64,000 bases of DNA from Bugula neritina (Eukaryota > Animalia > Bryozoa), in assembly GCA_964035545.1 (NCBI GenBank), contig OZ037765.1:35178080-35242079 (forward strand). Direction: 5' to 3'. A program made the position numbers and the translations under genes. A model generated the notes under the pieces. It was not told the DNA's origin. It saw only the letters and a program-made list of their open reading frames with translations, and searched no databases. Below are positions 25,723-63,010 of this stretch, piece after piece. Numbering within the stretch: position 1 is the first letter of the stretch; every line of letters begins with the position of its first letter.

Positions 25723-28700
25723 ATGGAGTTTTCAGCAACAGGTGGGTGTGGCCATGGTTGATGTCTCAAACATTATAACATAAAAGAATATATTATATTA
25801 TATAATATAATATATTATATTATATTATATGTTATACTATAGCATTTAGGACTGTCATATTTCTGGGTTGTGATATGAACAAGATGGAGTCAAACATGTA
25901 CACAACAATGTTTTAACCAGAGAATGATTTTATTTAAATTAGAATCACTATCTATATATTTTATAAGTTTACCAGAAGATTTAAAATAACGATATGCGTG
26001 GGGTTACATCACTTCTATTTCTTATATCAGTCTATATTCAAGTCAGTAGACACACAGACAGACTACTTACTGTAGACACACAGACAGACTACTTACTGTT
26101 GACACACAGACAGACTACTTACTGTAGACACACAGACAGACTACTTACTGTAGACACACAGACAGAGTACTTACTGTAGACACACAGACAGACTACTTAC
26201 TGTAGACACACAGACAGACTATTTACTGTAGACAAACAGACAGACTAGTTACTGTAGACACACAGACAGACTACTTACTGTGGACGCACAGACAGACTAC
26301 CTACTGTAGACACACAGACATACTACTCACTGTAGACACACAGACAGACTACCTACTGTAGACACACAGACAGACTACAAACTGTATGTATTGGTATGCC
26401 ACCAATCGTTGAAGGTTTCTTGCTTTATTAATACATTCATCAAAAACTTTTATTAGCTGGCAGTACTGTTGCTATAGTTTACTGTCCTTAGCACAGCACA
26501 GGTCAGTGTGTTCTAATCAAACAGCCATAGAGAAGCATTTATTGACTTTCCTCTTTCAACAGACGGCTCACTACAATTGCTATAACATTATATGATCACA
26601 CAGTTTTATACTCCAACATTTACACTCTGAATAGACCATCAGTTTTGACATTGGGATGACAAAGAATCCTATCTGTGCATCAATATTGGTACGATTTGAT
26701 AGTCAATAAACTTAAGAATCTGTTGTCAAGTTGGCTAATAGATAAAGTACATCACATTCTAAGTCACCCAGATACTGTCACAGACCTGATACAGTACCAA
26801 TATTGATGAGGCTGACATGGACCGACAGGCCATAGTTCATCTCAAGAAGCAACGTACTACTCTAAGGTCTAAAGTAACAATGCTAGCTAATCTCATAGAA
26901 TCAGCATTCTCTAGTAGCAGCTCTACAAAAGTGAAGTGTCTGCGATCTCAGCTTGAATTTACATATCAAGAGTTTCTAACTATCCATTATGACTTTTCGG
27001 AATACGTTTCGTCAGATGAGTCCATGGAAGACATTGCTTACGTTAATAAGATGAGTCCAGTAGAGTACTATGAAGCTGTAAAGGCTATTTATGACAAACC
27101 TATTTCTGACTGTAATACTTAGCATAGCAAGTCACAGTCACAGAAAACCATAAATCTGATCCATCTGTGGTCCGGTCCGGTCTCCCAGAGAGCGGTATGG
27201 GTGGCTGGGGGTCACTTTCAGGGGGCGCGGGTCATGCACCGACTATGGTCGCGTCGGGTCAGTTGTCTTCTCCTAGATTACACCCTAGCACACGTGAGGT
27301 TACTCTTGCACCAAATCCAGATATCACAGCAAGCGGTAAGGACAGGCAGGTACTACGGAAAGACCATACATCCAGTGGAGCTTTGGCATCAAATCCAGCT
27401 GTCATAGCAAATGCCAATGTCAGAGATATTTTTTCTTCTAAATTTTCAAGACGTGATCTTCATGGTAATACTGATCGTGCAACTCATTCTAAATCTTTGA
27501 TTCAAGGCGCAACCTCCTCGGTTGTCAATGCATATGATAGCTACCCTAATGGAACAAGTCAAATAAATTATGACCCTAGACATACAGGTGGAAATAACTT
27601 CAATAGATCTATACATAAAACTTATTCGCAACTCAAGCCATTTAACGGAACTAGATGTCATTGGCCGGAATTTAGGTCAGTATGGCTAAGATATGCCACT
27701 ATGTTTTACGATGATGTCAACAGGGCTTGTGAATTAAAAAAATTTCTCACAGGCGAAGCTCTGGAGATGATTCAGCCAATCTTCGCAACTCAACCTCAAG
27801 CTTACGAGAAACTGATGTGTAGATTACAAGAGGTCTACAATGATCTTAGCATGAGTGTGCAAGCAGTCTTCAACAATCTACAAGAACTAAAGCTATTAAA
27901 GGAAGGAGATGCATGAGAACTCGCCAAAATGGCCAACGCAGTAGAAAGTTCGTACAGCCAACTCGGTGAAGCAGGACTTTTGCAAGCTTTTACGCTGTCA
28001 CAGGTCGATACTTGCAAACCTATTACCTACAAGCATTAGACGAGACTGGGATAGGCACTTTCACATACTTACTCACGAGGAGAGAATCAAGCCATTCCCA
28101 CACCTCATGAGGTTTCTAGAGCAGGAACGGCAAATAGCCCTCAGACGCATAGAAACAGTAAATCCGGAGTCCTCCAGCATGCATAAACAAAAGGTGAAAG
28201 TGTTCTACACTGAAAGCAGTGGCCCAAAATCTAGCAGTAACAGGTCTAATAATAATAACACAATCATTGATAGTAAGAATTACTGTTTTATTCATTGCAA
28301 TAAACGTCATTGTCTTGTTGAGTGCAGAAATTTCTTGGCGTTGTCTGTAGATGGAAGATACAAGTTATTAAAAACTAATTCTCTATGTGTTAGGCGATTG
28401 AGCGCCCATGAGCCTAAGTGCTGTCCAAATTTTTGAACCCCTTGTTCAGTCTGTAATAAAACAACTCACCATGTGTTATTGAGCATCAAATCAGCTGAAA
28501 CTGATACAAATACCAATTGTAATACCAAGTAAAAACTGATCAAATTAGGTACAAGAGTAGGGAGAATCCTGGAGCGTCTGCTGTTCGCACCAGGGTCTAT
28601 GTGTCTCCTAATCATGAAGTGCACAATCATCCAGGAAACACTACAGTACTTGCCATTCAGCAGGCCCAAGTTATAGTGGGTGCATCTCATACAGCTATTA

Positions 28701-31700: not shown

Positions 31701-33575
31701 TATTTACCGTAGACCCACAGACAGACTATTTACTGTAGACACACAGACAGAATACTTATAGTGTGTATAATGCTATTGTCAGCTCAACACAAACCTCAGA
31801 GTCACAGAGTGAAATTGGATATAAATAAGGTGTTTTGCTCAGTTATTCAGAGTTCATTTATTTGTGTAAATATCATATAATTGTAGAGAAATACAGAGTC
31901 TGGTTCAGACACTCTGGAGAAGAGCCACCTGATGATGAATGGTATCAAAGTGGCACAAGAAAATACACCATAGATGGTATAAAGAAGGAGGTTAAAGGTC
32001 ACACAATCACCCACATGATAGTAGATGGAGATCTACCATATAATATTCATCTACTGGCTCCAGAGCTGAGTCACCTGAGAGTGAAGAATGTCAAATCTGT
32101 CTCTAACCTGTCTGGGTAAGTATCCGATTATTATTAAGATGTTTAGGTAAAATAAAATAGGATGTTTTCAGTGGAGGTGCTAACATGTGAAAGTAGTCGG
32201 GTGGAACACATCAATACTAACCTTTTCACTACCAAACCAACATTCCTTGTTTTGTATCTGGAGGCAGAGTTCACATGATATGTAATTGTTTGAGTGATTG
32301 AAGTTTTTTATTTAAATTTTTACATAAAAATCCTGAGTAAAGATTGACATGTGGACAGAGCCTATGACACCATGTGTTGCTTTTCTGGAAATTTCTGATA
32401 TTCTCTGAGCTGACACTTTACAGCTAATTTTTAGGATGTAGACACTCTATGCTCTATAGTGTCCTCTTGACTCCAGTTCAGTCTGACAAATACAACTTTT
32501 TCTACAGTTTTGAAATTTAAAGATTTCAAAATCAGAGTTAGCTCCCAGGTTTTAAAAATTTGCTCTTTCATTCAATATTATTGTGTTTTATCAATTGAGT
32601 TATTACTATTCTGGTATAAATTAAACTTCAGTTAGGAATGATGAGCTGATGAAGATTAATCTACAGAGAGTGGTTATTGGCTGATGAGTTGTGTCTTTAG
32701 ATTTTTCTGTATCAGTTGGACCTGTCTTTGAGGTCAAAATAAAAAGAGGTCCTTTTGTTACACTAAATACTTATAAAATTATCTCCCAACTATAGATAGA
32801 CAAAAAGTTGAATATGTAATACATGTTGGCGCAGTGGTTTTGTAATGTATAACATGTTACATACAGTGTATAGTTTCTTAGACTAAAATAGTTGTATATG
32901 AAATAGACTAATATGTTGCTAGCTATTTCTTAGGACAATATAAAAACATAATTTTCTCTTATGTCTAAATACATTTCCGACTTTTCTAGTCAACAGAAAG
33001 TTAATTCATTAAGTTATTAGAAACATATTTCCAAGGTGTAATGCAGCTCAAAGTAACGGCTATCACATTGTACTTTTATTCCATTGCTTCTATACTACAT
33101 TTTATATAGATTTTAAGCATTTTAGATAGGTTTTGGCAAATAACCACAGTATAATAGTTTGAAATAATTTTTTATCCACTGTAGACATTTTTTACAAAGG
33201 CAGAGCAGCTTAATTGATTACTATACAACACCTAGGTATGTTAATTAATATCTAAATGTTGTGACAGATGAGAAAAGTGCCATGTCACAAGCATATAGCC
33301 ACCTTCTGCATGTCTTTTAATATTGTAACGTTTTGTTGTTGGGACATTACATGAGCTTGGAAAGCTTGTGGAATAATTACAGCTTTACTTGTATTATCAT
33401 AGCTAAATATATATATGTTAGCTACATTATGCTTTCCTACAATGATTTTTGCTATTACAGAATAGCTATATTTTTTTGACTGTTATATAAACCCAGCATT
33501 TTCTGTTATTCACTCTCCTTTCTCTTTTCATTCAGTTTGCGATAATAAACACACAAATATATACATATATATATT

Positions 33576-33657
<82 letters not shown>

Positions 33658-36600: not shown

Positions 36601-37025
36601 GCTGTCAAGTTGGGTTCAGCAGCTGCTGTCGCTGATGTGGCTGTTGCCATGTGAGCGGGTACAGCTAAATTATATGGTGGCGGCTCGTCTTTGGCTTCTA
36701 TCTGCTAAGTATTCACCCCAGGCTAGGATGCACTATTGGCTTGAAAATAAGCACTCCCAAGCCGAAAGGCTCTCTCCATTGAGTCAATTTTGGTGACCAT
36801 CAAGTGTCGCTTCAAGTCAATGTTGTTGACTGTTTAAAGAAATGCCTCTAATGCAAGACTCCTCCAACCTTTTACTAGCATGTCGCCATAAGTGATTTGC
36901 ACCAGCCATTCGACTACAGTTACGTGTTCCCGCAGGGGCATTTTAGAATCACACTTAAACCCCTGCAGTCATGCATGCGCATCTTTAGTGGTGAGCCCGA
37001 TCCGAGCCCTCAACCCAACCCAACT

Positions 37026-37062
<37 letters not shown>

Positions 37063-43000: not shown

Positions 43001-46000
43001 ATCACAGCAGCAGAAATTTATGAGGTGGAAATTGTAGCACACATTCGAAAGGTCACTTTGATATATAGGAAAATACTAAGAACTTCGAAGAAATGTCTAA
43101 TAAACAAGCTACATAGAAATTTCTGCAAGCATCCTTAAACTTTTTCACAGCACCGTAGGTTTGTTGACATGAAGCTTCAGGGCAGGTTATTTTGTGAACT
43201 ATGTTGTGTAAGTGTCCTTTATTAGTTTTGTCGTTGATGCTGAAATGCGAACTTAAGGGAATTCCTTTGAATATAATTCAGGCATTAAGTTCAATTGGAA
43301 GTGAGTCTGCAATGAATTTGTTGAGAAAATGAAATATAGCTTTTCTCCTGCTACCCCTTTATAACGTAGTTGAAGTAAAATGTGTTTCCTGTTGTCCTTT
43401 TCACTGAGTAGTCCGTCACGAATGTTGGTAACAGTTTTCTCTATTATGTATACACAATTCAAATTTGGTTAATTGTTGCTAATTCTTCTTCAATTGGGAA
43501 GTTGACATATCGTGCAAGACCAAACTTATAAAAGTGTCACTAAATTTTTTCAAATTTCAAATAAGTCTGCTGAATTTAGCCTGCCAAATACATTTTATTT
43601 CCTTTAGAAATAGATAGATGTATACTATATATCACATGTCAACTAGTATATATGTTTACTATAGCATGTCTAATCTGAAGAATCTGAAGACTCTTAATAT
43701 GTCATGGAATAACTTCAGTGAAGGATTACCTGATGTAGTCACATCAATGACATCTCTAAGGAAGTTGGATATGTTTAACTGTAACCTACCAACTCTACCT
43801 GAGAGGTTAGTGAAACCAACTTCATATGAAATTTTCTTTCAGTAATTTCAAAGAATTATTGAATTATATAATTCGATAATTAGACATACAACTATGATAG
43901 TAAATACAATTTGCTTTTAGTTTTGCAAATACATTTTATTTAATTCAAAATATGTTATTCGATCTATTATATTATATTATATTTAATTACATCTAATATT
44001 TTTATTCATTATAATATTTTATTATATTGCATCGTATCTCAAATAGTATATCATATATTTACCATAGCATGTCTAATCTGAAGAATCTGGAGACTCTTGA
44101 TATGTCAGGGAATAACTTCAGTGAAGGATTACCTGATGTAGTCACATCAATGACATCTCTAAGAGAGCTGAATATGTATAACTGTAAGCTACCAACTCTA
44201 CCTGAGAGGTTAGTAAATGCAAGCACCCTCCTATAAGTGTTTTGCCTCCATGTTTATAGACATGCATCTCCTGTTGCTATATATTGTTAAAATTATTGCA
44301 AATTTCTTATTCTATATTTAAAGTTAACCAAAAAGATGCTAAATAATGTTTGAACTCAAAAGAAATATCATGTTGAATATGCTACTCTATTAACTTATTC
44401 CGTAAAAAGCTGCATATATCCTGCTATATAAAATGTCTCAAATAGTATATGTTTACTATATAGCATGTCTAATCTGAAGAATCTGGACACTCTTAATATA
44501 TCAGAGAATAACTTCAGTGAAGGATTACCTGATGTATTCACATCAATGACATCTCTAAGGAAGTTGGATATTAGTGACTGTAAACTATCAACTCTACCTG
44601 AGGGGTTAGTTAAACCAACTTCATATGAAATTTTCATTCAGTAATTTCAAAGAATTATTGAATTATATAATTCAATAATTAGACATACAACTATAATAAT
44701 AAATACAATTTGCTTTTAGTTTTACAAGTACATTTTATTCAATTCAAAATATGTTATTATATTTATTATATTATATTTAATTACATCAAATATTTTGTTT
44801 TATTATAATATTTTATTATATTGCATCGTATCTCAACTAGCATATATTTACTATAGTATGTCTAATCTGAAGTATCTGGAGACTCTTAATATGTCAGTGA
44901 ATAACTTCAGTGAAGGATTACCTGATGTAGTCACATCAATGACATCTCTAAGAGAGTTGGATATTAGTGACTGTGAACTACAAACTCTACCTGGGAGGTT
45001 AGTAAATGCAAGCACCTTTCTAGTGTTTTGCCTCCATGTTTATAGACATGCATCTCCTGTTGCTATGTATTGTTAAATTTATTGCAAATTACTTATTCTA
45101 TATTTAAAGTTAACCAAAAATTTAGAATTTACCTGCATGTTTTGAGACTTATATTTTTTTGCTAAATAATTTGTGAAAATTTCTCAAATCTGTTGAATGT
45201 TTGCTTATATGATGTATACAATATGCAGATAAATAGAAGCTAATAAAGAGATGCTATACGTAATATTATAACATGTGGTTATATGGAATATATAAAACAT
45301 GTTCCAATATTTTAATTTCCTATAATGCTTGAATTAAGTAGAAGCTATAGTAAGCTGAGTTTATTAGACTTTTCTTGAAAAATAAAAAGCTTAAGCTTTA
45401 TTATGTAATATCCTGCAGACTAAAATCAGGTTCTGACCTAGCAATATAATGTATAGTTGATATCTAAATAAGTTATACAGTCGTTTGTTATACTATAAGC
45501 AGTAATAACCTTTAATTGAAGTGTTATAAATAATTAATTTGTATTTTGAAGTATGAAACAAAAATGAATTATTTTAGCAATTATCTGTAACTATGACAAA
45601 CATTATTATATATAAAAATATAAATGCATAAACTGTGAAGGGTATATACTTTGTATTCAGCTTGGTGTTGAAAAAAAGGACTCATGCAGTATATTTCACA
45701 TGTATATGTGAAATTCATATCTACTGATGTCTTTTATTCCAACTTGATACTCCATTAAATGAAATTTATTATAAATCAATGGGAAACTTTATGCTAAAAT
45801 TATGTTTCTATTGCTTTAGATGGTTGTATTACTACATGATGTCTCAACTAGTATATGTTTACTATAGCATGTCTAATCTGAAGAATCTGGAGACTCTTAA
45901 TATGTCAGGGAATAACTTCAGTGAAGGATTACCTGATGTATTCACATCAATGACATCTCTAAGGATGTTGGATATGTTTAACTGTAACCTACCAGCTCTA

Positions 46001-49000
46001 CCTAAGAGGTTATAGTGAAACCAACTACATATGAAATTTTCATCCAGTAATTTCAAAGAATTATTGAGTTATATAATTCAATAATTAGACATACAACTAT
46101 AATAATAAATACAATTTGCTTTTAGTTTTACAAATACATATATTTTGTCTTATTATAATAACTTATTATATTGCATCGTATCTCAACTAGTATATGTTTA
46201 CCATAGCATGTCTAATCTGAAGAATCTGGAGACTCTTAAAATGTCAGGGAATAACTTCAGTGAAGGATTACCTGATGTATTCACATCAATGACATCTCTA
46301 AGGAAGTTGGATATGTTTAACTGTAACCTACCAGCTCTACCTAAGAGGTTATAGTGAAACCAACTTCATATGAAATCTTCATCCAGTAATTTCAAAGAAT
46401 TATTGAGTTATATAATTCAGTAATTAGACATAGAACTATAATAATAAATACAATTAGCTTTTAGTTTTACAAATAGATATATTTTGTTTTATTATAATAT
46501 TTTATTATATTGCATCGTATCTCAACTAGTATATGTTTACTATAGCATGTCTAATCTGAAGAATCTGAAGACTCTTGATATGTCAGGGAATATCTTCAGT
46601 AAAGGATTACCTGACGTATTCACATCAATGACATCTCTAAGAGAGTTGAATATTAGTGGCTGTAGACTACCAACTCTACCTGAGAGGTTAGTAAATGCAA
46701 GCACCCTCCTAGTGTTTTGCCTCCATGTTTATAGACATGCATCTCCTGTTGCTATTTATTGTTAAAATTATTGCAAATTTCTTATTCTACATTTAAAGTT
46801 AACCAAAAATCTAGAATTTACCTGTATGTTTTGAGACTTACATTTTTTTGCTAAATAATCTGTGAAAATTTCTCAAATCTGTAGAATGTTTGCTTATATG
46901 ATGTATACAATATATATGCAGATAAATATAAGCTAATAAAGAGATGCTATGTAATATTATGACATGTGGTTATGGAATATATAAGGCATGTTCCAATATT
47001 TTAATTTCCTATGATGCTCGAATTAAGTAGAAGTTATAGTAAGCTGAGTTTATTAGACTTTTCTTGAAAAATAAAAAGCCTAAGCTTTATTATGTAATCT
47101 CCTGCAGACTAAAATCAGGTTCTGATCTAGCAGTATAATGTATAGTTAGTATCTATAAATAAGTTATGCAGTCGTTTGTTATACTATAAGCAGTAATAAC
47201 CTTTAATTGAAATGTTATAAATAATTAATTTGTGTTTTGAAGTATGAAACAAAAAGGAATTATTTTAGCAATTATCTGTAACAATGACAAACATTATTAT
47301 ATATAAAAATATAAATGCATAAACTGTGAAGGATACATACTTTGTATTCAGCTTGGTGTTGAAAAAAAGGACCCATACAGTATATTTCACATGTATATGT
47401 GAAATTCATATCTACTGATGTCTTTTATTCCAACTTGATACTCCATTAAATGAAATTTATTATATATCAATGGGAAACTTTATGCTAGAATTATATTTCT
47501 ATTGCTTTAGATGGTTGTATTACTATATGATGTCTCAACTAGTATATGTTTACTATAGCATGTCTAATCTGGAGAATCTGCAGAATCTTAACATGTCATG
47601 GAATAACTTCAGTGAAGGATTACCTGATGCATTCACATCAATGACATCTCTAAGAGAGTTGGATATTAGTTATTGTAGACTACCAACTCTACCTGAGAGG
47701 TTAGTAAATGCAAGCACCCTCCTAGTGTTTTGCCTCCATGTTTATAGACATGCATCTCCTGTTGCTATGTATTGTTAAAATTATTGCAAATTTCTTATTC
47801 TATATTTAAAGTTAACCAAAAATCTAGAATTTACCTGCATGTTTGGAGACTTACATTTTTTTTGCTGAAAAATCTGTGAAAATTTCTCAAATCTGCATGT
47901 TGAATGTTTGCTTATATGATGAATACAATATGCAAATAATTATAAGCTAATAAAGAGATGCTATGTAATATTATGACATGTTTATGTCAGTGAGTGTTCC
48001 AATGTTTTTTAATTGTTATTGTAATCGTTTGTGGATAAACAGATATTGTGATAAGAAAGTTTGGGTTAGTTTCGTGTGATAGGTAATCTTTAATCTGTCT
48101 CAAACCATAAGCCAGAGAATGTACTACAAACACACAATGAAGTAATACTGGTATAAGTAATGCTTAGACACAAAAATATTATATAACCAGTACAAGTAAT
48201 TACTATAACGTATGCTACAGAGTTTACACATAATACAAATTATTATAATAACCTTGTAACAATAGAATGAAGATGGGAAGCCAAACATATCAGCGTGTTG
48301 GGTTATAACTGTTATAGGTTAAATTGCTACAGAGTATTAGTATTAAGTATTTAGCTGATAGCCTGAGGTCTAAGTCAATTGTCAGACACTATCATCAACA
48401 TCTCCTTTTCTTTTATAAAAAGTTGGTATAAGTTTGATAATGTAATGAATGAATTATAATTGATTAGGTCAATATAGTTTTAGTAGCAAAAGGGTTGATA
48501 CGATAAAAGCTTAGTTAGTCTAGATCATGGGCTACTCCAACACATAGTCCTGGTATTTTGGATGCATTTTGAAGTGGGAAACAAAAAGGAATTATTTTAG
48601 CAATTATCTGTAACTATGACAAATATTATTATATAAAAACATATAAATGCATGAAATGTGAAGGGTATATACTTTGTATTCAGCTTGGTGTTGAAAAAAA
48701 AGACTCATGCAGTATATTTCACATGTATATGTGAAATTCACATCTACTGATGTTTTTTATTCCAACTTCATACTCCATTAAATGAAATTTGTTATATATT
48801 TCAATGGGAAACTTTATGCTAGAATTATATTTCTATTGCTTTAGATGGTTGTATTACTACATGATGTCTCAACTAGTATATGTTTACTACAGCATGTTTA
48901 ATCTGAAGAATCTGGACACTCTTAATATGTCAGGGAATAACTTCAGTGAAAGATTACCTGATGTATTCACATCAATGACATCTCTAAGAAACTTGTATAT

Positions 49001-52000
49001 GGAGCAATGTCAACTAGTAACTCTACCTGAGAGGTTAGTAGGAATGCATTAAATAAAATATTCATCAGTGTGAAGGATATAGTTCTGCAATAAGAGTATT
49101 TATTTTTCAAGTAAAATTATCTAAAGGTTTTAAAGTTAAGCTTGGAAAGTTCTACAGAAACAGTTTTACATACTTTTTGGGATTCCCTAAGTACAATATA
49201 TCAGGTTCACAGTAGAATCACAAGTACCAATTGTGTTAAATACTTCCCACTGAGAATCAACCTCCGGCTTGCCAACTGAGGCTCTAACCATTACACTCTA
49301 AGGACCACTGGGTAATGTCAATGCTACACTAAACTGTTCACATGTGCATTCAGTTCTGGGGTCCCATAAAGCTATTCTGTGTACAGTCACATATCTCTAA
49401 TCACAGCAGACTATAATATAATTCTACATACCCCCTGCCTTCAAATGACATCACAATTACTATAAGACACCAAATTATCATAAGCAGATTCTATGGAATG
49501 AAATATTAATATATAATTATATTATTATTATTATTGCAGTTATGTGTCATAAGGAAACCTCATCTTCATGTTGTTTAGAGACAAAACAGTTGCATTAAGG
49601 GCAGAGTTCATCAAGTTGTATTTTATATTAGGTTGCATGTAATACATAAGGATTTATATATCGAAACAGTTGTATACAGATGTAACTTTTTAAATGACAA
49701 ATTTGAAAAAAGTTGCTCGTTATAAATCTGCAATCATGTTTGCAAATTAATAAATATTGTAATGGATTTCAGTGGTTCAATTAATTGTTAGTTATTATAT
49801 TGAAAGGGTCGACTCTATATTGTATATTATTGTGGATATCGACAGCATCGACCTCCAGCGACTTGTATCTATGGTCGACAGTGGCACCACTAATAACAGC
49901 CAATCAGGACTGACATGCTAATTGGTAGCAGGTGGAGCTAGCTACTCGTAGTGGAAGCCGCTGAGTAGCTAGCCAGGCAAACCAGCTTGGGACTTCGCTT
50001 AGAGTAGTTGTGTGTAAAGTCTCACTTATTATGTAATCGTTCAATTCATGTTAGCAGTAATTCAATTCTTGTATCTTGTAAATAATAAACTTATCATAAC
50101 GTAAATAACCTGGTGTAGTAGCTTTGTTTAAGTCGACCCACATAACATAGTGAATTGTGAAATTCACTACAGTGGTGGCAGCGGTGGGATTCCACTTGAT
50201 ACAAATGCTCCTAGCCAGGGAGTAGAAAGAAGATAGCCGACGAGGACGACGCGCCCGGACAGGAACCGGCAGCATTAGAGGAGGATCACATAGGCGGCCC
50301 AGCGCTGCCTATGGACAGGTACCACTTGCGGGCTCCCATCTTCTCAGGGGAAGGAGATGTGGAGCAAGTCATCACTAAGTTTAGTGATGTGGCGGCCATT
50401 TGCAGATGGCTGAATAGGGTTACTCTGATCCAGCTGCGGTTATGTCTGACAGGGCCGGCGAAACCCTATGGAATAAGCAAGAATGTCGGTGACATATTTG
50501 AAGCATTACGAGCTTGGTTTGGATTAACCGCTCGAGATGCTCGCGTGCAACTCCAGGGGCTTAGAAGAAATCCTAAGACTAACCTGCGAGAGCATGCTAC
50601 CGTAGTCGAACGACTGGCACAAGTCGCCTAAGGCGACTTGCCTGCTGATAGTTGACAGAGCTTAGCACTGGATGCATTCCTCCAGTCTATTAACAACCTT
50701 GGGCTGAAACAGCATCTGCTGGTGGCCGAGGTTGAGACTATGGAGAGAGCTCTAAGGCTTGGGAATGCTTATTTCCAAGCTGATAGTGCGTGCCGACCTG
50801 GTACGACAATACAGCAGGTCGGAGCAGACGACGACGTGTCGACGTCACCGGCGAAGACAGCTGTACATGTCGCCTCGGCAGCAGCCGACGAGCCGACTAG
50901 CTTGACCACAAGCTTGGTTCGAGAACTGCTAGCCGAGATCAGGCAACTGCGCCAGCAGTGGACAGCCGAGTGACCCAGGAGGTCGTCGGTAGCTGTCGAC
51001 GACAGGCGCCGCCCCGTATGCTGGGGCTGTGGTAGTGGTGGGCACTTCATAAGAAGTTGCCCCCGCGGTAGTGGGAGGCAGTTAAACAGCAATGGCCCAC
51101 GATAACTTCCGCCGACCGTGGGCTCCAGTTTAACCCCCCAAGGCAGAGGCCAAGGCCCAAACCCCACCGGGTAAGGAGGCCGCCTTCGTCAGAGTGGCAA
51201 GCCCCAAGGAGAGTTAGTAGGCCGCAAGGCCCGCCAAAACTTCCGGCTTGGGCACTCAAAAATCGCTTTGAAGGTTTGCTTGATGAGGGAGTGAATGACG
51301 AGTGAGAGCGAAACAGGGATTTTCCTTGGTTGCCCACACGAGCATCAGCCCGAGAATTCACTCGGCCACCTGTGTGTGAGCAAGACCGAGATGTAACCTG
51401 CTTGCCCACGCGACGTCGACGACCCCCTCGCAACCGAAAAGCACAGGTGCATCCCCAACTCCATGCACATGAGGTGTCGTCTCAAGAGACGAACCGCTCA
51501 ATGAGCGCTCAGCCATATGGAAGCAGCTATTTCCTCCCGGGCAAACTTGCTGGCAAAGCTGTCACATTCCTGTTGGATACTGGGTGCACCACCAACCTAC
51601 TGAGTCGGCGTCTATTCGACACTCTCAGTGCCAGGGACAGGGCTAGCCTAGAACCATATGAAGGGGAGCACGGCACGTTGGCGGACGGGTCGTGTATTCC
51701 TTTCTATGGGGTAATCCAGTTGACTGGTAGAGTCCGTGATCAGACGACCAGTGAGACCTTCATCGTCAGTCAACTCAAGGAGGACGCCATCTTGGGCATG
51801 CCATTTCTGAAGCGACACAGGTGCTACATCGAATTTAACAAGTCGGCGGTGGTGATGGCCGGGCGTGAGCCGGCCTGTGTCGACCAATTTGGCCGACCTT
51901 TGGTGGGGGGAGTGCAGGTGGTAGAGCGTTGTACTGTACCTGGGCGCTCCCGGGCTACAGTTCGCTGCAGAGTGAACTGTAGGGAAATCTCCGAGTTAGG

Positions 52001-55000: not shown

Positions 55001-58000
55001 AAACCAAAAGGTGATCAACCTGCATGGTTCAATCTTAGAGCGAAGAAGCTAGTCCAGAAACAACGTGAAACGTATAACAAATTTAAACAAACAAATTACC
55101 CTTTTTTTCTGACAAAATACAAACAACAAAGACGTGACACTAAACGCACTCTGAGAGAACTAAGGAACAACTATACCACTGAAGTAGTATGCGGACCATT
55201 GGAAGCTGGAAACAGCAAACCCTTCTTTAAATATCTGAAGAATATTCAGAACAAAACAAAACCCATGCTGACACTTACTCACCCTAATGGTACTTCCACA
55301 ACTGATCCTCGAGAAAATGCTGAGATGCTCAATAATTTTTTTCAGCAACAGTTCTGCCAGCAAGATTTCTACACCGACGACCTCCCTTATCACTCTGATG
55401 ATCTGAATGTGACTCCCGATGGGGTGGAAAAGCTTCTGAACGATCTCAAAACTGGTAAGGCACCTGGTCCGGACGGACTTAACAAAGAGGATCTCTGCAT
55501 CGATACTAGATTGATAGCCAACTGCCTAACACTAATCTTTAACGCATCCTTGCGCAGTGCCAAACTTCCTGCGGGATGGAAGCTAGCCAACATCATCCCT
55601 GTCCACAAGAAAAGCCAGCTAGATATGCCAAACAACTATTGACCAATATCATTAACCAGTATACCTTGCAAGTTACTGGAACACATTGTGCTACACTATC
55701 TCAATAAACTGTTAGATCCCATCCTCCATAATCGTCAACATGGTTTCCGTCGTGGCTTGTCCTGCGAAACACAGCTTTGTGGAACCATCCATGAAATTGC
55801 CAGGTCAATGAACAACTCTCACACCACTCATGCTCTTGTTCTCGACTTCCAGAAGGCCTTCGACAAAGTCCCCCACAAGCTACTCATACATAAGTTAAGC
55901 GTCGTTGATGGAAATAATCCTCACATACTCCGATGGCTCCATAATTTTTTGACAAAGCGAGAGCAGCAAGTAATCATAGATGGCCACTCTTCTTGTAGAT
56001 TACCAGTCTTTTCTGGCGTTCCACAGGGCTCTGTCCTGGGGCCCACCCTATTCCTTCTTTACATCAATGATCTCCCTGATCTACTAAGTTGCAGTGTCAG
56101 TTTATTTGCTGATGACACACTGATTTTTCAAGAGGTAGACTCCCTAGATGATGTCCGAAAATTCCAAAAGAATATTGAACAGATTGAGAATTGGTCTCTG
56201 AAGTGGAAGATGCCGTTCAACTCCTCAAAATGCCGAATCATGTCATTTGGCAAAGATCCCCAAATTCAACCATCATATCGACTAGGGGGAGAAACATTGC
56301 CCTACGTAGATGAGATTACCTACCTTGGAGTTACACTACAATCTAACCTCAAGTTTCACAGCCACATAACTAAGAAAATAAACAAAGCATACAAGGTTCT
56401 TGGCATGCTAAAGCTATCCCTCTATGGAGCTCCCAAGAAAGCAAAGCTGCTGGCATATATGACTCTCTGCAGACCTATACTAGAATACGCTGCAACCACT
56501 TGGGATCCTGTAACAAAGCAACTTGTGAAAGAAATTGAGTTAGTCCATAACTGAGCTATTAGATTCATCTGCTGTCTCAAAGGCCGGGAGGCTAGCATCA
56601 GTGATGCAAGACAACAACTCAACATATCATCACTGGAAGATCGTCGCAAAAGCCTACGAATAACCCTCCTTTTGAAGATCTTGTCCAAAGAAGAATGTCA
56701 TCAGGCATTATCTTCCAGCTACACTGAACTGACAAGGGACAAGTCAACCGCTACGGTTACCACGAGGGCTGCCTCTAACGGAATACCAACTGCGATATCT
56801 GCCATGTGCACAGCATATCATAACAGCTTCCTACCGCGCACTATTAGAGACCTAAGAATTGGAACTCCCTAAATACTTGATAAATGATAACCTGAAAGGT
56901 ACTACAATTACCAAATTTAAAATGCATAATGTATGCAAATACAGTTATAATTCTATGTCAAATGTATTGTAACAAGCTGCTGAGGCACGCCTCTTGCACC
57001 TTATGGTGATCTAGCGTGTGCTAAAGTCGAAGTATTGAAGTAAGTATATTCAGTCTACTCGGAGGTTGTCTAATTATAATTGTTCATCGCTTTTATAATT
57101 AGTCTAAGGTTGACAATAGTCTACACTGTTAATCCCAGTGTAGTTATTGGTTGCAAGTAATTAATTATTCATTAATTCTTGCTGTTGCCTGGTTTATAAC
57201 TGCTTATCCCAGTCATAGCCAGTTTTATATTGTAGGCTGCAATAAATAAAGACAGGTTGTGGCAGCAAGAGAATAATCTTTTCTTGTCGCCTCCAGTTGA
57301 TACTGTATTTGATAAGTTATCCCTGTTAAAACAGTAGTCATAAACTTATCACAATAACCTCCGCAAGTAGTTGTGTAGAGGCAACGTTAGTTCACTCGCC
57401 TTACAGTAAAAATCTTTTACAATATTTTGTTGTATTTAGTTTACTTCAAAGTGGTGCAGTAACATTTCTACAGTAACACAATTGTATAGAGTTGGACATT
57501 TTTAAATGATGTATATAAGAATAGTTTGTCGACATTTTTGCAAATGCATAACAGTTTGAATAAGTGTTGGGTTGAGGTTGTGAAATATTTCTAAACATCT
57601 GTAAAAGTTGTAATCAGAAGGAATATATTTGCCGGATTTTGAGTTATTATAATATATGTTTATCTGAATTACAGTTTACAGTATCTGAAGAATCTGGAGT
57701 TTCTGAATATCGACAAAAACAATGATCTAGCCACTCCCCCTTATGAAGTGTGTAGACAAGGATTGTCAGCTATCAGGCAGTACTACAGAGATTTTGCTAA
57801 AGGTAAAGGTGAAAGTCTTCCACTAGTCACCATTGCAGTGATTGGTAACACAATGGCAGGGAAGACAAGTCTCATCAGAACCTTGCAGAGTGAAGAGAGA
57901 AAGAGAGTGCTGACAAAACGTGGACCTGAGGCTGTTGTTGATGAAACAACTAAAGTCTTTAAAGTTGAAGAGTTGAAAGTAAATAACACGGTTCTGAGAC

Positions 58001-61000
58001 TAATTGACATGGGAGGACAACCAGTGTACCACATGACTTACCAGTTAACACTTAAACAGAACTGCATCCCGATAGTAGTGGTGAACATGAAGCAGTATGA
58101 TCAGCTGGCACAGGAGAAGGGAGACAGAGAGGCTGTGAGAAGACTGGCTTTTGATTGGCTAGCTCATTTATACGTAGCAAATCCTGACATTGGACCACCA
58201 AAACTTGTATTTACTCACAAAGACAAGTTTGATGAGGAGAATTTCACAAGGATGACAACTGCTTTCACCAGCACAGCTGATCTACTGAAAGATGAAATAA
58301 TCAGAGAAGAGAAAAAACTTGACCAATGCATAGCGAAGATAGAGCACTTCCATCAACACAGAGAGCTGTTCTTGCTAGAAGATATCTACTCAGTTGGAAA
58401 AGAAGATAATTATCAAACATACGAAGTCATGAAAACTGCCATTTTTGATTCAGCTCAAAATTTTGTGAAAGTGCTGCCAAAGCTATGGGAAGATGTGAAT
58501 AAGAAAGTTTTAGGATTACAGACAGCATTCAGTACATTTGATGAGATACTTCGTACAGTGCAGCAAGTAGATAGAAGTATCACACCTGATCAGCTCGCCA
58601 TAATCCTCACCTACATGCATGATTGTGGTAAAGTCTTATGGTACAAGGATATTAAAGAGTTGAAGCTGATTATTTTTCAAAAAATTGAAGAAGTTACTAA
58701 ACTACTCACAATCTTGTTTCATCATGATGAAGATGTGTGGCAGACTCGGCAAACAAGTTTCAAACCACTGCTTCTAACTAACGGAGCTTTTCTTGAGGAA
58801 GAACAGCTCCATCAACTTACAGAGGATTTCCGGTCCTCAGGTATTCTAGACAATCAACTTTTAGAATATCTGATTCGAACAGAGACAGCATTTTTTGATA
58901 AAGATAAAAGTCAATTTGCTGTCACTTTGCTGCAGAAATTTAGCATTATCTACGGACCAGTTGATCTGGAGTCAAAAAGCTATTTCATTGTTCCCTTCCA
59001 CTCCCCTGATTACCTAGAGAACACTCTCAATACTGATCAAGACATTATTCTCCATGCTGAGATCATTTTCAAAGGTCTCTCAATCCCACAATATGTTTAC
59101 CAACAGATGAGTGTAGTTGTCCTACGAATGTTCCCAAATGAGACAAGTTTTCCCCTCGTTAAAAAAAACGGTGTGAAGGTTTATCACGATGATGTCTCAG
59201 TGTGCCTTGTCCATGACGGCCTCTCAAGGAAGGCAGAAGTTACAGTGTCTGGAGCAGCAGAGAAAATCACAGATTGTTGGAAACATATTGTCATGGTTAC
59301 CAGAAAGATTTCTAAAGAAGTCCAAAGTTCATGGCCTGCCAGCAGAATGGTTCACAAGTCTAGTTGTACACACTGCATACTGAAAGGTGAATCTGGTCCT
59401 AAGATTCAGGTAACTCCCAGTTGGTGTCTTGACTTTCAAACTGAGAAACCCTTTCAACGGTTTCAGAAGGAGATGGTGACAGTTCGCTGTGGGGAACATA
59501 AGATCCTAAGCCCATTCATGCACCCGTGTAAGTTTGTGTTGTGATAGTTTTTGAGATATAATTTGTTATAAAAATATCAATAACATTAACATGATAGTCT
59601 ATTTTTTCAAACATTAAGCATAAATTTACTATTTAATTAAAGTGCTTTAAGCTTTTCACTTAAATCAGCAGATTAGATATTAAATTCTAACAGTATTTTG
59701 CACCCTTAGAAATCCACTTGCCCTCTATCCTTTTGGCACACATGTTCAGTTCAGAAATGTACTGTGGGATTTAGGTAATCGTTTGAATGAGTCTGAAACC
59801 AAGGATATAGAAAGAAGCGTTCACAAGATAAAAAAAGAGAGAAAGGATTTGGAAATGCCCAAAAACAAGCCTGGTAATGTATCATACGTCTAAAACTGAA
59901 AAAACTCAGTTTTCATGCTGGGCTCATATAACTAATTAATCGAAATGTCAATATTCGCATTATTGATTATTAACGCATTTATAGACTTGTTTACAGCATC
60001 AACTACATCAAGTCAGCCCATTGAGGAACATGAAGAAAGTGATTTGTCTGATGATGATGACTATCTGCTGCCTGAAACTGATGCTGACAGAAAGAAACTT
60101 TATCTTCACCAGACACCTGCTCCTACAACTAAACAGAAAGTTAGAGACCTATTCTCACACTCTGATAAAGTGAGTTTTATTTAAACAACACAACCAGTTT
60201 AAGTCACTTTTTCAAAAAATGAATCCCGAATTGCTTGTTGGCTTGAGGTCTGAGAGTGTGAAAGCTAACATATGTTGGTTCATTTTTGTTCGCAACATCC
60301 AGGTGTTTCCAATGACCAGGAAAAGAGGCAGAGCTCTGATTATCAACAATAAAAAAGTGAAAGCTCATCTAGATAGACATGGCTCTGATGTAGATGTTAA
60401 AAATTTAGAAGATTTGCTGGAATCTTTTCAGTTTGATGTTGTTACCAAGACAGACCTCTCTGCTCAGGTGTTGACACATTGTGTTTTATGAATAAGTGAT
60501 GATATAGTTAAATATACTATCATCTGTTGTTATTGGTTGCAGCAAATTTAATTTTATATATGCCCTGGTCTAAGCACAAACAAAGATATACTCATTAGCT
60601 GATTAGAAATCTGAATAATGAGTGCTCTGTTTGGCTGTGTATTATGTTGTTTATAGAAACAATTGAAATTAAGCCCGAACCAAGTTACCCAACTATCTAA
60701 TAGAAATAAATATAATGAAATAGAAAATGATAACTTCAAATTAAACATTTTATAAATATTGAAATTTACTGAATGCAGACTAATGAAAATATTTTGTTGA
60801 TTAAACTTTTTCCACAAAGTAGACTGACAAAGTTTTCACATGATACTAAATGTAACTACAGGAGATGTGGGAAACAGTGAAGGGAGAAGTGAATGGTGTG
60901 AGGAATGCTGATCATGGAATGTTCTTCCTGTTTATTGGTTCTCATGGAGTTGAGAGTCATGTCTATGGATCAGATGGAAAGTTGGTGAAACTGATAGACC

Positions 61001-63010
61001 TGTATGACCTGCTGTCTGTTCCTCAGAACCCAGTGATTGCTGATAAACCTAAGCTGGTTGTCATCCAAGCTTGTAGTGGTGGTGAGTATCTATTGAGTTG
61101 ATGTTTTATTTATTTGAAATTTAGCCACAGAGAATGCATATTTTTGACTGTTATTATTCTGACTGTTTCCTAATAATAGATGCTTCAATCTTCAAACTAG
61201 CAATAGTCACATGGTAAACAATGTTATTCCATGGTAAACAGGTAGAAAAGATTTGGGTAAAAAAGGATACAAAGATGTAGAGACAGGAGAAGACAATGAA
61301 TTTGGTGATGAAGATGAGAGTGTGACTCAACCAGAAGTATTCACTCCTCCAAAGTACGTCTCTGGTGGATACTATAAAGGAGATGGAATTGAGAGACTTC
61401 ACTGTGAAAACCTGTTTATTATAAATGCCAGCTTTGATTGTGAGTGTCTTAACTGTTCTTCAAAAGTAGTCTTTGGCAAATTATATGAGTTAGATGCTGG
61501 TTTACTTTGATACAGTAATAAATTGTAGAGCAGAATTTAAAAAATCTTTTTAAGTATGATTACTGCATAGCATGACTCTATTTCCCCTTACAGTATTTCA
61601 TTCCATCAGCTTGTATTTATTTGATGACAGTGTAAACGTCTTAAAATCTTCATATGCTGATACCCTATACCATTAAGCATTGTTCATATGTCACATACTG
61701 TATATAAATATATACTGATGTAATATATTATAGTATTCACTTTGTTATAGCCTATGTGTCCATGAGATCTAATATCTATGGTTCTCTACTAGTCAGATGT
61801 CTGGTCAGAACGCTCTACCGTCATGCCTGTCACAGAGACATGTACGAGATCTACAAAGCTGTAAGCCTAACTATATACCAATTCCACAGGCTATTGTCTT
61901 CTAATGCTCTTCCTTTTATTGAGTTTGTAATACCTCATTAGCTGAAACTGAGTTGAATTACTATCTATACTCACTCAAACAGAAACATGGAACATAAAAT
62001 ATTGGGCTTTTACCAATAGATTTAAAACCTACATTTTCTCAGCAAAAATTCTAAGAAATATTTTCTAACTGTTTGATCATTCTGCCATCTAATTTTTCTG
62101 TGAAGTATTTGCATATAACTTTTAACCAGCTATATAAGGCTATAGGATGTGTGAGGCTTGAAATACCAACACGTGAAAATTTATAAATAGAGTTCAGGTT
62201 CTGTATACGAGATACTGTTAGAACATGTTACATATTCTATATACTAGATACTGTTAGAGTATGTTACATATTATATATACTAGATACTGTTAGATTATGT
62301 TACATATTCTATATACTATATACTGTTAGATTATGTTACATATTCTATATACTAGATACTGTTAGAACACGTTACATATTATATATACTAGATACTGTTA
62401 GAGTATGTTACATATTATATATACTAGATACTGTTAGAGTATGTTACATATTCTATATACTAGATACTGTTAGAGTATGTTACATATTCTATATACTAGA
62501 TACTGTTAGAGTATGTTACATATTCTATATACTAGATACTGTTAGATTATGTTACATATTCTATATACTATATACTGTTAGAGTATGTTACATATTATAT
62601 ATACTAGATACTGTTAGAGTATGTTACATATTATATATACTAGATACTGTTAGAGTATGTTACATATTCTATATACTATATACTGTTAGATTATGTTACA
62701 TATTCTATATACTAGATACTGTTAGAGTATGTTACATATTATATATACTAGATACTGTTAGAACATATTTCAGGTTCAACACAGAATCAGTGAGTACTGT
62801 AAGAGAAAGAAGGACATTCTAACTGGACAGCTGGTAGTTGCTAGTGACACTCTCTCTCATGGAAGGAAACTCTACCTGTTTCCTGGATACAACGGAGTTT
62901 CTGGTACAGATATCCATCAGGGAGCTACTCAGATAGAAGGAGAGAATAAACCAGAGTCAGTTGGCTCTACCATGTTATATAGAAAACGGAATTCATGTTC
63001 TATAATATAA
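25723..63010 (+). CDS. LRR-Roc-COR-caspase fusion protein (ROCO-family GTPase with a C-terminal caspase), about 1523 aa
   Basis: Phase-consistent GT-AG exons: 25723-25741 (tentative start, MEFSAT), 31887-32115, nine 141-bp LRR exons (43665-49033), 57675-59527 (last LRR, Roc, COR), 59775-59873, 59997-60169, 60303-60467, 60862-61081, 61242-61439, 61751-61860, 62774-63010; total 4572 nt with no in-frame stop. Confidence 0.8.
26046..26386. repeat. 26-bp minisatellite AGACACACAGACAGACTACTTACTGT, continued at 31681-31758 after the BEL insertion
   Basis: Same unit flanks both LTRs. Confidence 0.9.
26387..31680 (+). mobile_element. Non-autonomous, degenerate BEL/Pao-like LTR element
   Basis: ~407-bp TG...CA direct repeats at 26387-26793 and 31273-31680 (similar, not identical); 5-bp TSD CTGTA (26382-26386 / 31681-31685); broken gag with LKPFNG..WPEF (DUF1759-like), three Cys/His knuckle remnants and a Pao-type protease region (IDLLIGND); no RT/RH/IN seen. 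Confidence 0.88.
26817..29161 (+). pseudogene. Disrupted BEL/Pao gag-protease
   Basis: Fragments 26817-27122, 27167-27916, 27966-28436 and 28781-29161 separated by stops and frameshifts. Confidence 0.8.
31887..32115 (+). CDS. N-terminal coding exon of the LRR-Roc-COR-caspase gene (LRR N-cap-like)
   Basis: TTGTAG acceptor and GG|GTAAGT phase-2 donor matching the phase-2 LRR exons; ends in LRR-like LAPELSHLRVKNVKSVSNLSG. Confidence 0.7.
33555..33654. repeat. (TA)n microsatellite
   Basis: Seen directly. Confidence 0.95.
34600..37025 (-). mobile_element. Degenerate, internally deleted Gypsy fragment of the same lineage (gag, protease, ORF3 tail); LTRs not identified
   Basis: Frameshifted homology to the 10301-17799 element (FLLDTGCTTNLLSRRLFDT, SQLKEDIIHGM, VEKFSRPFVGGLQVV); boundaries approximate. 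Confidence 0.8.
37060..43155 (-). mobile_element. Tc1/mariner DNA transposon remnant, split by a Gypsy insertion
   Basis: HTH region with GSGRPRK (42764-42522) continues to ...KSLLTEK at ~42390, then resumes below 37399 with ..LRWAKKH..VIISDESTF..VMFWGCITSKGVGRL; Tc1-type end TA|CGGTGCTGTGAAAAAAG at 43155; other end lost near the (TA)n at 37030-37059. Confidence 0.85.
37400..42383 (-). mobile_element. Non-autonomous Gypsy LTR element (RT/RNase H and integrase core deleted)
   Basis: LTRs 42028-42383 and 37400-37767; 4-bp TSD CTAC; tRNA-Leu-type PBS 42009-42026; same PPT region as element 1; broken gag, protease fused in frame to the integrase zinc-finger region (ORF 39762..40952), ORF3 remnant ~38090-39110. 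Confidence 0.92.
43665..49033 (+). CDS. Tandem array of nine 141-bp phase 2-2 exons, each encoding a 24+23-aa LRR pair
   Basis: Exons 43665-43805, 44068-44208, 44464-44604, 44857-44997, 45868-46008, 46207-46347, 46546-46686, 47559-47699, 48893-49033; consensus MSNLKNLxTLxMSxNNFSEGLPDVFTSMTSLRxLxxxxCxLPTLPE; all bounded by AG and GT. Confidence 0.93.
49758..53438 (+). mobile_element. Non-autonomous Gypsy LTR element (deleted from early RT to the end of ORF3)
   Basis: ~414-bp LTRs 49758-50171 and 53024-53438; TSD ATAT; PBS 50173-50190; gag with stops, protease (FLLDTGC), RT start ending at WRFCVDY. Confidence 0.93.
53805..54005. repeat. Degenerate tandem repeat (TTAGTTAGAGTTGAGAATGGAG...) upstream of the LINE
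   Basis: Seen directly. Confidence 0.7.
54100..56900 (+). mobile_element. Inactivated non-LTR retrotransposon (LINE ORF2: APE endonuclease plus RT; CR1/L2-like group)
   Basis: LLNARSV, VCVTETH, GGGV, GDFN, LDL and SDH endonuclease motifs; KAPGPDG, QHGF, DFQKAFD, GVPQGSVLGP, YINDL and FADD RT motifs; C-terminal SFLPRTIRD; several in-frame stops (54377, 55640, 56552) and a frameshift. Confidence 0.92.
56968..57421. mobile_element. Probable solo LTR
   Basis: TGTAA...TTACA ends, 454 bp, internal AATAAA at ~57241, flanks GTAT/ATAT (one mismatch). Confidence 0.45.
57675..59527 (+). CDS. Large exon: final LRR, PPxEV hinge, Roc GTPase and COR domain
   Basis: LKNLEFLNIDKN LRR; TPPYEVCRQGLSAIRQY pre-Roc hinge; G1 GNTMAGKTS, G3 DMGGQ, Roc-type G4 THKD; COR motifs LPKLW and LTYMHDCGKVLWY. 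Confidence 0.92.
60303..63010 (+). CDS. Caspase (peptidase C14) domain exons, p20 plus p10, ending in a CaaX motif
   Basis: RGRALIINN, RHGSDVD, catalytic SHG, KPKLVVIQACSG, p10 YVSMR...GSLLV and KLYLFPG; last exon ends YRKRNSCSII-TAA (stop 63008-63010). Confidence 0.92.
62208..62766. repeat. 36-bp intronic minisatellite GATACTGTTAGAGTATGTTACATATTCTATATACTA
   Basis: About 15 copies running up to the last caspase-exon acceptor (62773). Confidence 0.93.

What the first reader, a model, noticed from the sequence alone, without database searches (positions are those of the whole stretch)
25723..63010. Single-chain LRR-Roc-COR-caspase: candidate all-in-one immune sensor, GTPase switch and protease
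Seen: the Roc-COR exon (57675-59527) splices in frame through two linker exons into five caspase exons, with no stop and no separate start for the caspase. Roc G1/G3/G4 motifs, caspase catalytic His (SHG) and Cys (QACSG), and both S1-pocket arginines (RHGS, SMR) are intact. Established: ROCO proteins (LRRK, MFHAS1, DAPK1) use COR for dimerisation and usually carry kinase or death domains; initiator caspases are activated by induced dimerisation. Inference: ligand binding to the LRRs could shift the Roc-COR dimer state and activate the attached caspase directly, i.e. an NLR/inflammasome-like pathway collapsed into one polypeptide with a GTPase in place of the STAND ATPase. I do not know of a characterised protein with this architecture, but could not search.
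Basis: partly seen in the sequence, partly recalled or inferred. Interest (0 to 1): 0.95.

Follow-up and report, generated by a model that had tools for sequence, protein, structure and literature searches.

The report
Bryozoan LRR-Roco GTPase fused to caspase
This intact gene, most likely from a bryozoan (moss animal), joins a fast-varying leucine-rich-repeat surface, a Roc-COR GTPase switch and a complete caspase in one protein, a layout already listed for bacteria and partly noted in amphioxus and an annelid, but not tested in any paper I found.

Summary
Observation confirmed. Nineteen exons give an open 1,523-aa LRR-Roc-COR-caspase with intact GTPase and caspase motifs. One RNA-seq contig of a close relative (about 92% identical) splices Roc-COR through both linkers into the caspase. 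Intron positions match Watersipora and Bugula homologues.

The architecture is not new. Kaur 2021 lists bacterial LRR+AP-GTPase+COR+CASPASE, Zhang 2008 reported amphioxus 'LRRs-caspase', and Horkan 2024 an annelid ROC-caspase. I found further full fusions in Watersipora RefSeq and at least 12 in Branchiostoma, where sister Rocos carry GT4, Death or OTU domains instead.

I found no paper on the bryozoan family. Here nine tandem 141-nt LRR exons vary mainly at the ligand face (pN/pS 2.2; p=5e-4), while Roc-COR and caspase are under purifying selection (dN/dS about 0.25). This resembles brown-algal ROCO exon shuffling.

Best reading: a cytosolic sensor whose Roc-COR state gates caspase dimerisation. 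Ligand, activity and direction of the switch are untested. The scan already found this family on other DNA of this genome (60+ copies, unchecked notes). Verdict: new variant of a known kind.

The parts
25723..25741 (+). Putative first coding exon (ATG, 19 nt); least certain part
   Evidence: ATG plus GT donor, phase fits exon 2; no RNA or homology test
31887..32115 (+). Exon 2, N-terminal cap region before the LRRs (phase 1-2)
   Evidence: Homologous to N-termini of Watersipora and Bugula family members, E down to 1e-21 with the first LRR exon; Bugula P0239 has a 238-nt phase 1-2 exon
43665..49033 (+). Array of nine symmetric 141-nt phase 2-2 exons, two LRRs each (starts 43665, 44068, 44464, 44857, 45868, 46207, 46546, 47559, 48893)
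   Evidence: 87-96% nt identical to the first copy, all open with AG/GT; Pfam LRR; variation concentrated at concave-face x positions, p=5e-4, pN/pS 2.2
57675..59527 (+). Single exon: last LRR, Roc GTPase, COR-A, COR-B and a conserved CxHC motif
   Evidence: Pfam, PDB sequence hits to C. tepidum Roco, fold match to LRRK1 and CtRoco; dN/dS 0.25 against paralogue L001
57844..57870 (+). G1 P-loop (GNTMAGKTS)
   Evidence: G, G and K conserved in 56-58 of 60 rows
58006..58020 (+). G3 motif (DMGGQ)
58213..58224 (+). G4 motif (THKD)
59542..59544 (+). In-frame TGA inside the intron, reached only if the 59528 donor is not used
   Evidence: RNA contig splices at 59527; X1 contig depth 0.36 in 59528-59683 against 32.6 just before
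59775..59873 (+). Linker exon 1 (phase 1-1), predicted helical
   Evidence: RNA joints; helix at this position in the homologue model
59997..60169 (+). Linker exon 2 with conserved acidic S[DE][LVI]SD motif at 60038-60052; candidate caspase-cleavage or CK2 site
   Evidence: RNA joints; motif in 13 of 16 bryozoan linkers against 0.04 expected in shuffles, 0 of 10 amphioxus
60303..60467 (+). Caspase exon 1, S1 Arg (RHGS, 60375)
   Evidence: Pfam C14, RNA joints
60862..61081 (+). Caspase exon 2, catalytic His (60943) and Cys (61072, QACSG)
   Evidence: Pfam C14, alignment, dN/dS 0.23
61242..61439 (+). Caspase exon 3, acidic inter-subunit linker with several Asp
   Evidence: joint to 61751 in RNA; close paralogues have an unrelated sequence here
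61751..61860 (+). Caspase exon 4, second S1 Arg (SMR, 61765)
62774..63010 (+). Last exon: end of small subunit, 40-aa tail ending in a basic patch plus CaaX-like CSII (62996-63007), stop
   Evidence: intron position shared with Watersipora and amphioxus; CaaX absent from 26 homologues checked

Best explanation
A functional member of an expanded bryozoan family of cytosolic sensor-proteases. Shown: one spliced reading frame carries about 19 LRRs, a Roc-COR module and a caspase with a complete active site; the LRR ligand face diversifies while the enzymes are conserved. Inferred: the LRRs bind a variable non-self or damage ligand; this changes the nucleotide state and COR-mediated association of the Roc-COR module; two tethered caspase domains are thereby brought together, dimerise and self-process (inter-subunit Asp residues, and possibly the conserved DxSD site that would free the protease); the result is cell death or a defence response. 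It would work like an NLR plus adaptor plus initiator caspase in one chain, and like the bacterial AP-GTPase conflict proteins.
For: Open 19-exon frame. RNA contig across the COR-caspase joints. Intron positions and phases from the COR end to the caspase end shared with Watersipora P0028 (six identical columns plus the linker intron within 5 columns) and mostly with Bugula P0239. Purifying selection on Roc, COR and caspase, dN/dS 0.22-0.28, against 0.8-1.5 for LRR exons compared with the same paralogue. Concave-face variation. Many paralogues. In amphioxus the same chassis swaps caspase, Death, GT4 and OTU effectors, as described for bacterial AP-GTPases. The caspase falls outside the executioner clade in quick trees. 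In a homologue model Roc-COR and caspase fold with high confidence either side of a disordered linker, pTM 0.68 against 0.90 for Roc-COR alone, which fits a loose tether.
Against: No ligand, activity, infection-response or localisation data. The RNA contig is from a relative, not this copy. CtRoco is dimeric in the GDP or empty state and monomerises on GTP, so a resting dimer would need another brake. The linker is about 90 aa and partly disordered, so coupling may be loose. Whether this COR dimerises was not testable. pN/pS values rest on few synonymous changes.
Confidence: 0.55

Rival explanations
1. Same sensor role, opposite logic. The resting Roc-COR dimer or the acidic linker holds the caspase inactive. 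Ligand or GTP loading monomerises the module or exposes the conserved S[DE][LVI]SD site, and cleavage or dephosphorylation there releases the caspase.
For: GTP-induced monomerisation of CtRoco. Motif conserved in 13 of 16 bryozoan linkers and lying at the end of a low-confidence stretch in the model. DxxD and CK2-like character are from my own knowledge.
Against: Initiator caspases generally need dimerisation (own knowledge). The motif is absent from amphioxus fusions and from both Bugula proteins and one Watersipora model checked.
Confidence: 0.2
2. The protein is a regulated protease for something other than pathogen sensing, such as colony self/non-self recognition, polypide recycling or stress signalling; or the caspase is mainly a scaffold.
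For: No immune data for any member. Brown-algal ROCOs respond to many stresses. This copy has a private CaaX-like tail suggesting membrane targeting.
Against: Ligand-face diversification, copy-number expansion and effector swapping are typical of conflict genes. The catalytic and S1 residues are kept across the family.
Confidence: 0.17
3. This particular copy is silent, or is two genes: an LRR-Roc-COR ending at TGA 59544 and a separate caspase.
For: No exactly matching RNA contig spans a joint. An in-frame stop follows the donor by 15 nt. The introns are full of retrotransposons. Paralogue L001 carries frameshifts. Some Watersipora models lack the caspase or are caspase-only.
Against: Spliced contig of a close relative, no sign of intron retention. 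Conserved intron positions. No stop or frameshift in 4.6 kb of coding sequence.
Confidence: 0.08

Closest known systems
Bacterial AP-GTPase (Roco) conflict proteins, LRR+AP-GTPase+COR+CASPASE, e.g. OQX07365.1 (Kaur et al. 2021, PMC8195603)
   Same: Identical domain order; variable N-terminal LRRs; C-terminal effector slot; paralogue sets; predicted counter-invader role.
   Different: Here a spliced animal gene with a metazoan-type caspase (QACxG plus S1 Arg residues). The four bacterial Roc-COR rows form a separate branch in my tree. I did not compare the bacterial caspase-bearing members themselves.
Amphioxus 'LRRs-caspase' (Zhang et al. 2008, PMC2575513); Branchiostoma proteins such as XP_002614028.1
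   Same: Database proteins have LRR-Roc-COR-C14. The 2008 paper already proposed a direct link from recognition to apoptosis. Four introns inside the caspase are shared.
   Different: The paper did not mention Roc-COR, and I could not confirm which gene models it meant. Only about 25% caspase identity to the window. LRRs lie in one large exon and the linker is short without the acidic motif. Common or separate origin is unresolved (AU p=0.2 and 0.099).
Owenia fusiformis caspase with ROC pro-domain (Horkan et al. 2024, PMC11463336)
   Same: Animal caspase with a ROC domain in the pro-domain.
   Different: Single gene, no LRR or COR reported, no mechanism; sequence not compared here.
Brown-algal ROCO candidate immune receptors (PMC11378527)
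   Same: Tandem symmetric phase-2 LRR exons, selection on the concave face, family expansion.
   Different: 72-nt one-repeat exons rather than 141-nt two-repeat exons; most have no effector, three have a non-caspase peptidase. Alternative splicing is shown there and untested here.
MFHAS1, LRRK1/2, DAPK1
   Same: Roc-COR fold; RefSeq labels many homologues 'MFHAS1 homolog'.
   Different: No kinase or death domain; MFHAS1 has no C-terminal enzyme.
NLR inflammasome and Apaf-1/caspase-9 apoptosome
   Same: Proposed logic: repeat sensor, NTPase switch, proximity-activated caspase.
   Different: GTPase rather than STAND ATPase; no CARD, PYD or DED adaptor; sensor is N-terminal and caspase is in cis.

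Membership tests
ROCO proteins | Roc GTPase domain with G1-G4 motifs | tested here: met
   Pfam Roc 30.5 bits, above cut-off 27; motifs conserved
ROCO proteins | COR domain directly after Roc | tested here: met
   Pfam COR-A and COR-B below cut-off, but the model aligns over about 580-630 columns with LRRK1, CtRoco and the isolated COR 3dpt
ROCO proteins | GTP binding and hydrolysis; nucleotide-dependent dimer cycle | not testable with these tools
   Needs biochemistry
Caspases (C14A) | His-Cys dyad in SHG and QACxG context | tested here: met
   x is Ser in almost all bryozoan members
Caspases (C14A) | S1 pocket Arg/Gln/Arg for P1 Asp | tested here: met
   RHGS, Q of QAC and SMR align with homologous positions
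Caspases (C14A) | Caspase fold with large and small subunit | tested here: met
   Shown on Watersipora homologue P0152, TM by target 0.79-0.86 to caspases; the window's own joined caspase was not folded
Caspases (C14A) | Asp-specific proteolysis | not testable with these tools
   Needs assay
Initiator caspases | Long pro-domain; outside the caspase-3/6/7 clade; activated by dimerisation | tested here: inconclusive
   Long pro-region and bryozoan-specific clade outside executioners in quick trees, but long branch, subclass unresolved, AU test unfinished
NLR / STAND receptors | NACHT or NB-ARC ATPase | tested here: not met
   Central module is Roc-COR
LRRK / DAPK | Protein kinase domain | tested here: not met
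   No kinase in the exons scanned or in full-length homologues
Bacterial AP-GTPase conflict system | Variable LRRs + AP-GTPase + COR + C-terminal effector | tested here: met
   Same order
Bacterial AP-GTPase conflict system | Descent from the bacterial members | tested here: inconclusive
   Bacterial rows branch apart, but only four were included and none carried a caspase
Exon-shuffling ROCO receptors (brown-algal type) | Symmetric LRR exons with concave-face diversification | tested here: met
Exon-shuffling ROCO receptors (brown-algal type) | Alternative splicing or somatic shuffling of LRR exons | not tested

The most novel reading that the evidence does not exclude
Bryozoans use a large family of single-chain Roco-caspases as a main intracellular immune receptor class, in the role NLRs and inflammasomes play elsewhere. 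The LRR ligand face is diversified by duplication, exchange and perhaps alternative splicing of cassette exons, and a GTPase cycle directly gates caspase dimerisation, a mode of caspase activation I found no experimental report of.
Probability: 0.3. Interest if true: 0.85.

Novelty: new variant of a known kind. Interest (0 to 1): 0.62.

Why it matters
If the mechanism holds, this is a natural adaptor-free route to caspase activation, and it gives a simple fluorogenic read-out for a disputed question in the LRRK2 field: which nucleotide and oligomer state of Roc-COR is the active one. It also suggests that animals run the same LRR-Roc-COR plus exchangeable effector design described in bacteria, and that bryozoans and brown algae converged on cassette-exon LRR diversification in Roco genes.

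Tried and rejected
Read-through to TGA 59544 as the main product: rejected for the family on the RNA joint and shared intron position. Extra or decayed LRR exons in the large introns: none found. Independent origin of bryozoan and amphioxus fusions: suggested by the free trees, but AU tests did not reject sister relationships (p=0.2 for Roc-COR, p=0.099 for caspase). Only strict monophyly of all caspase-bearing Roc-CORs was rejected (p=3e-49), which reflects effector swapping in amphioxus. CaaX as a family trait: absent from 26 homologues. Linking Zhang 2008 to specific gene models: the supplement is an image. Paper searches for ROC-COR+caspase+Branchiostoma and for bryozoan caspase expansions found nothing relevant; the library lacks most subscription papers, and my attempt to fetch the 2008 amphioxus immune-repertoire paper by a remembered id failed. 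ESM Atlas returned only MFHAS1 and Roco clusters below 0.9. Slips: exon 2 start was off by one (fixed); the tblastn query was out of frame and was not used; the careful caspase tree and the executioner AU test did not finish.

Full report
Method note. Inside local scripts I did join the exons read from window.fa. I used that translation to test the frame, to compare it with proteins already fetched (local phmmer and BLAST), and as one row in alignments, trees and motif checks.

Gene model. Nineteen exons join in frame with GT-AG introns: 4,572 nt, 1,523 aa, no internal stop. Layout: short first exon and cap exon (aa 1-83), nine two-repeat LRR exons (83-505), one 1,853-nt exon with a last LRR, Roc and COR (506-1123), two linker exons (1124-1214) and five caspase exons (1215-1523). 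Pfam finds Roc above its cut-off, COR-A and COR-B weakly, and Peptidase_C14 in two exons. The closest PDB sequences of the big exon are C. tepidum Roco. Its AlphaFold model (pLDDT 90.8, pTM 0.90) matches LRRK1, CtRoco and LRRK2 across Roc and COR. G1, G2 Thr, G3 and G4 are conserved in the family alignment. The caspase dyad and S1 residues align with those of homologues.

Is it one transcript? An RNA-seq run (X1, marked RNA by guess) holds one 714-nt contig whose joints fall on the predicted introns from the end of Roc-COR through both linkers into caspase exon 2. The joint 61439>61751 appears too. These joints are not listed for run X3, which has unspliced exact-match pieces, and there is almost no X1 depth over the intron that holds TGA 59544. 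The contig is about 92% identical, so it proves the spliced fusion for a close relative, not for this copy. Separately, the introns from the COR end to the caspase end fall at the same aligned columns and phases as in Watersipora XP_067947674.1 (six identical, the linker intron within 5 columns) and, for five of them, Bugula KAF6024315.1.

Family and organism. The Roc-COR exon has 88 relatives at E<1e-30 among 50%-identity representatives. Named close ones are Watersipora subatra RefSeq proteins, several with LRR-Roc-COR-C14 in one chain, and Bugula neritina proteins labelled CASP8. The window is therefore most likely a bryozoan; the species was not established. Many diverged contigs pile on the exons, consistent with earlier scan notes of 60 or more copies in this genome (count not checked by me). 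At least 12 Branchiostoma proteins have Roc or COR followed by C14, and their closest Roco relatives carry GT4, Death or OTU instead. In the Roc-COR tree these effectors interleave within one well-supported amphioxus clade, while the bryozoan proteins form their own clade. Strict monophyly of caspase-bearing Rocos is rejected, but a sister relationship of the bryozoan and amphioxus groups is not, so one or two origins remains open. The bryozoan caspases form a long-branched clade outside the executioner group in quick trees.

Selection. The nine LRR exons are 87-96% identical to the first and all open. Structural Leu, Asn and Cys columns are invariant; 21 of 41 extra amino-acid states fall in the 10 concave-face positions (permutation p=5e-4); pairwise pN/pS is 2.2. 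Against a close paralogue (L001), dN/dS is 0.22-0.28 for Roc, COR and two caspase exons but 0.8-1.5 for the LRR exons. LRR dS (0.11-0.21) is lower than Roc-COR dS (0.43), a hint of exon exchange between paralogues that rests on few sites. Watersipora and Bugula also use phase 2-2 LRR exons of 132-153 nt, while the amphioxus gene checked has its LRRs in one exon. This parallels brown-algal ROCO genes (PMC11378527).

Mechanism. A model of a Watersipora homologue shows Roc-COR and caspase each folded with high confidence, joined by a helix and a disordered acidic stretch, pTM 0.68, which fits a tether rather than a fixed interface. That stretch holds an S[DE][LVI]SD motif in 13 of 16 bryozoan proteins, 0.04 expected; it could be a self-cleavage or CK2 site (inference). 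The most likely reading is ligand-controlled Roc-COR association that drives caspase dimerisation (0.55). Because CtRoco is dimeric without GTP and monomeric with it (PMC5714945), the opposite release logic is a real rival (0.2). A non-immune role gets 0.17 and a silent or split gene 0.08. This copy ends in a basic patch plus CSII, a possible prenylation signal that homologues lack (lead from scan note s1-487344).

Prior description. The exact architecture is listed for bacteria (PMC8195603), with an animal APGTPase+COR+DED+TRADDN+CASPASE in a sponge in the same source data. Amphioxus LRRs-caspase was published with the shortcut hypothesis (PMC2575513), and an Owenia ROC-caspase in 2024 (PMC11463336). 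A 2019 Roco review lists no such group, and I found no paper on the bryozoan family or any experiment on such a protein.

Verdict. Real and well supported. It is a ROCO protein and a caspase by every sequence test I could run; it is not an NLR; it works, by inference, like a one-chain inflammasome. New variant of a known kind, interest 0.62.

Noticed in passing
window 62981-63007: C-terminus has a basic patch plus CaaX-like CSII on a 40-aa tail; none of 26 homologues checked ends in CaaX.
   Followed up: partly
window 61242-61439: Close paralogues in RNA runs X1 and X2 and in run X3 leave the match near 61024-61073 and rejoin at 61779, so the inter-subunit linker exon differs strongly between paralogues.
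   Followed up: no
window 45868-46355: LRR exons 5 and 6 have a different donor context (gttata instead of gttagt), a candidate for skipping.
   Followed up: no
window 59365-59376: CxHC motif at the end of COR-B; both Cys invariant in 60 homologues, with a further Cys conserved 38 residues on; possible zinc site.
   Followed up: partly
L004:10001-15043 and L005:3074-7726: Intronless single-ORF proteins (1,680 and 1,550 aa) with a weak Roc hit and a C-terminal QACRG caspase but no LRR hit, on ENA contigs of unknown, probably eukaryotic origin; possibly another Roc-caspase fusion type.
   Followed up: partly
Branchiostoma proteins P0159-P0211: Amphioxus Rocos exchange C-terminal effectors (caspase, GT4, Death, OTU) within one clade; some carry two, e.g. 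P0159 caspase+Death and P0162 caspase+GT4+Death by Pfam list.
   Followed up: partly
L001:6801-8615: Paralogue 85% identical over Roc-COR with +2 and +1 insertions (frameshifts): pseudogene or assembly error.
   Followed up: partly
window 10300-17800: Apparently full-length Gypsy-type LTR retrotransposon with open gag-like and pol ORFs (RT, RNase H, integrase) and a third ORF at 16535-17209 without a Pfam hit.
   Followed up: no
window 26386-31680: LTR element (412-bp repeats, 95.6% identical; BEL/Pao-like by eye) in intron 1, carrying an open 269-aa Ser/Lys-rich ORF at 29768-30577 with no Pfam hit.
   Followed up: no
window 35500-42400, 49758-53438, 54100-57000: Decayed Gypsy-like elements and a LINE-like RT in the gene's large introns.
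   Followed up: no
window about 2400-22300, minus strand: Exons of an upstream, divergently oriented gene that looks prominin-like; recognised by eye only.
   Followed up: no
P0158; P0255, P0264: An ankyrin-RING-caspase protein (Logan), and Watersipora caspase-only models nested inside the fusion caspase clade, which are either truncated gene models or derived stand-alone caspases.
   Followed up: no
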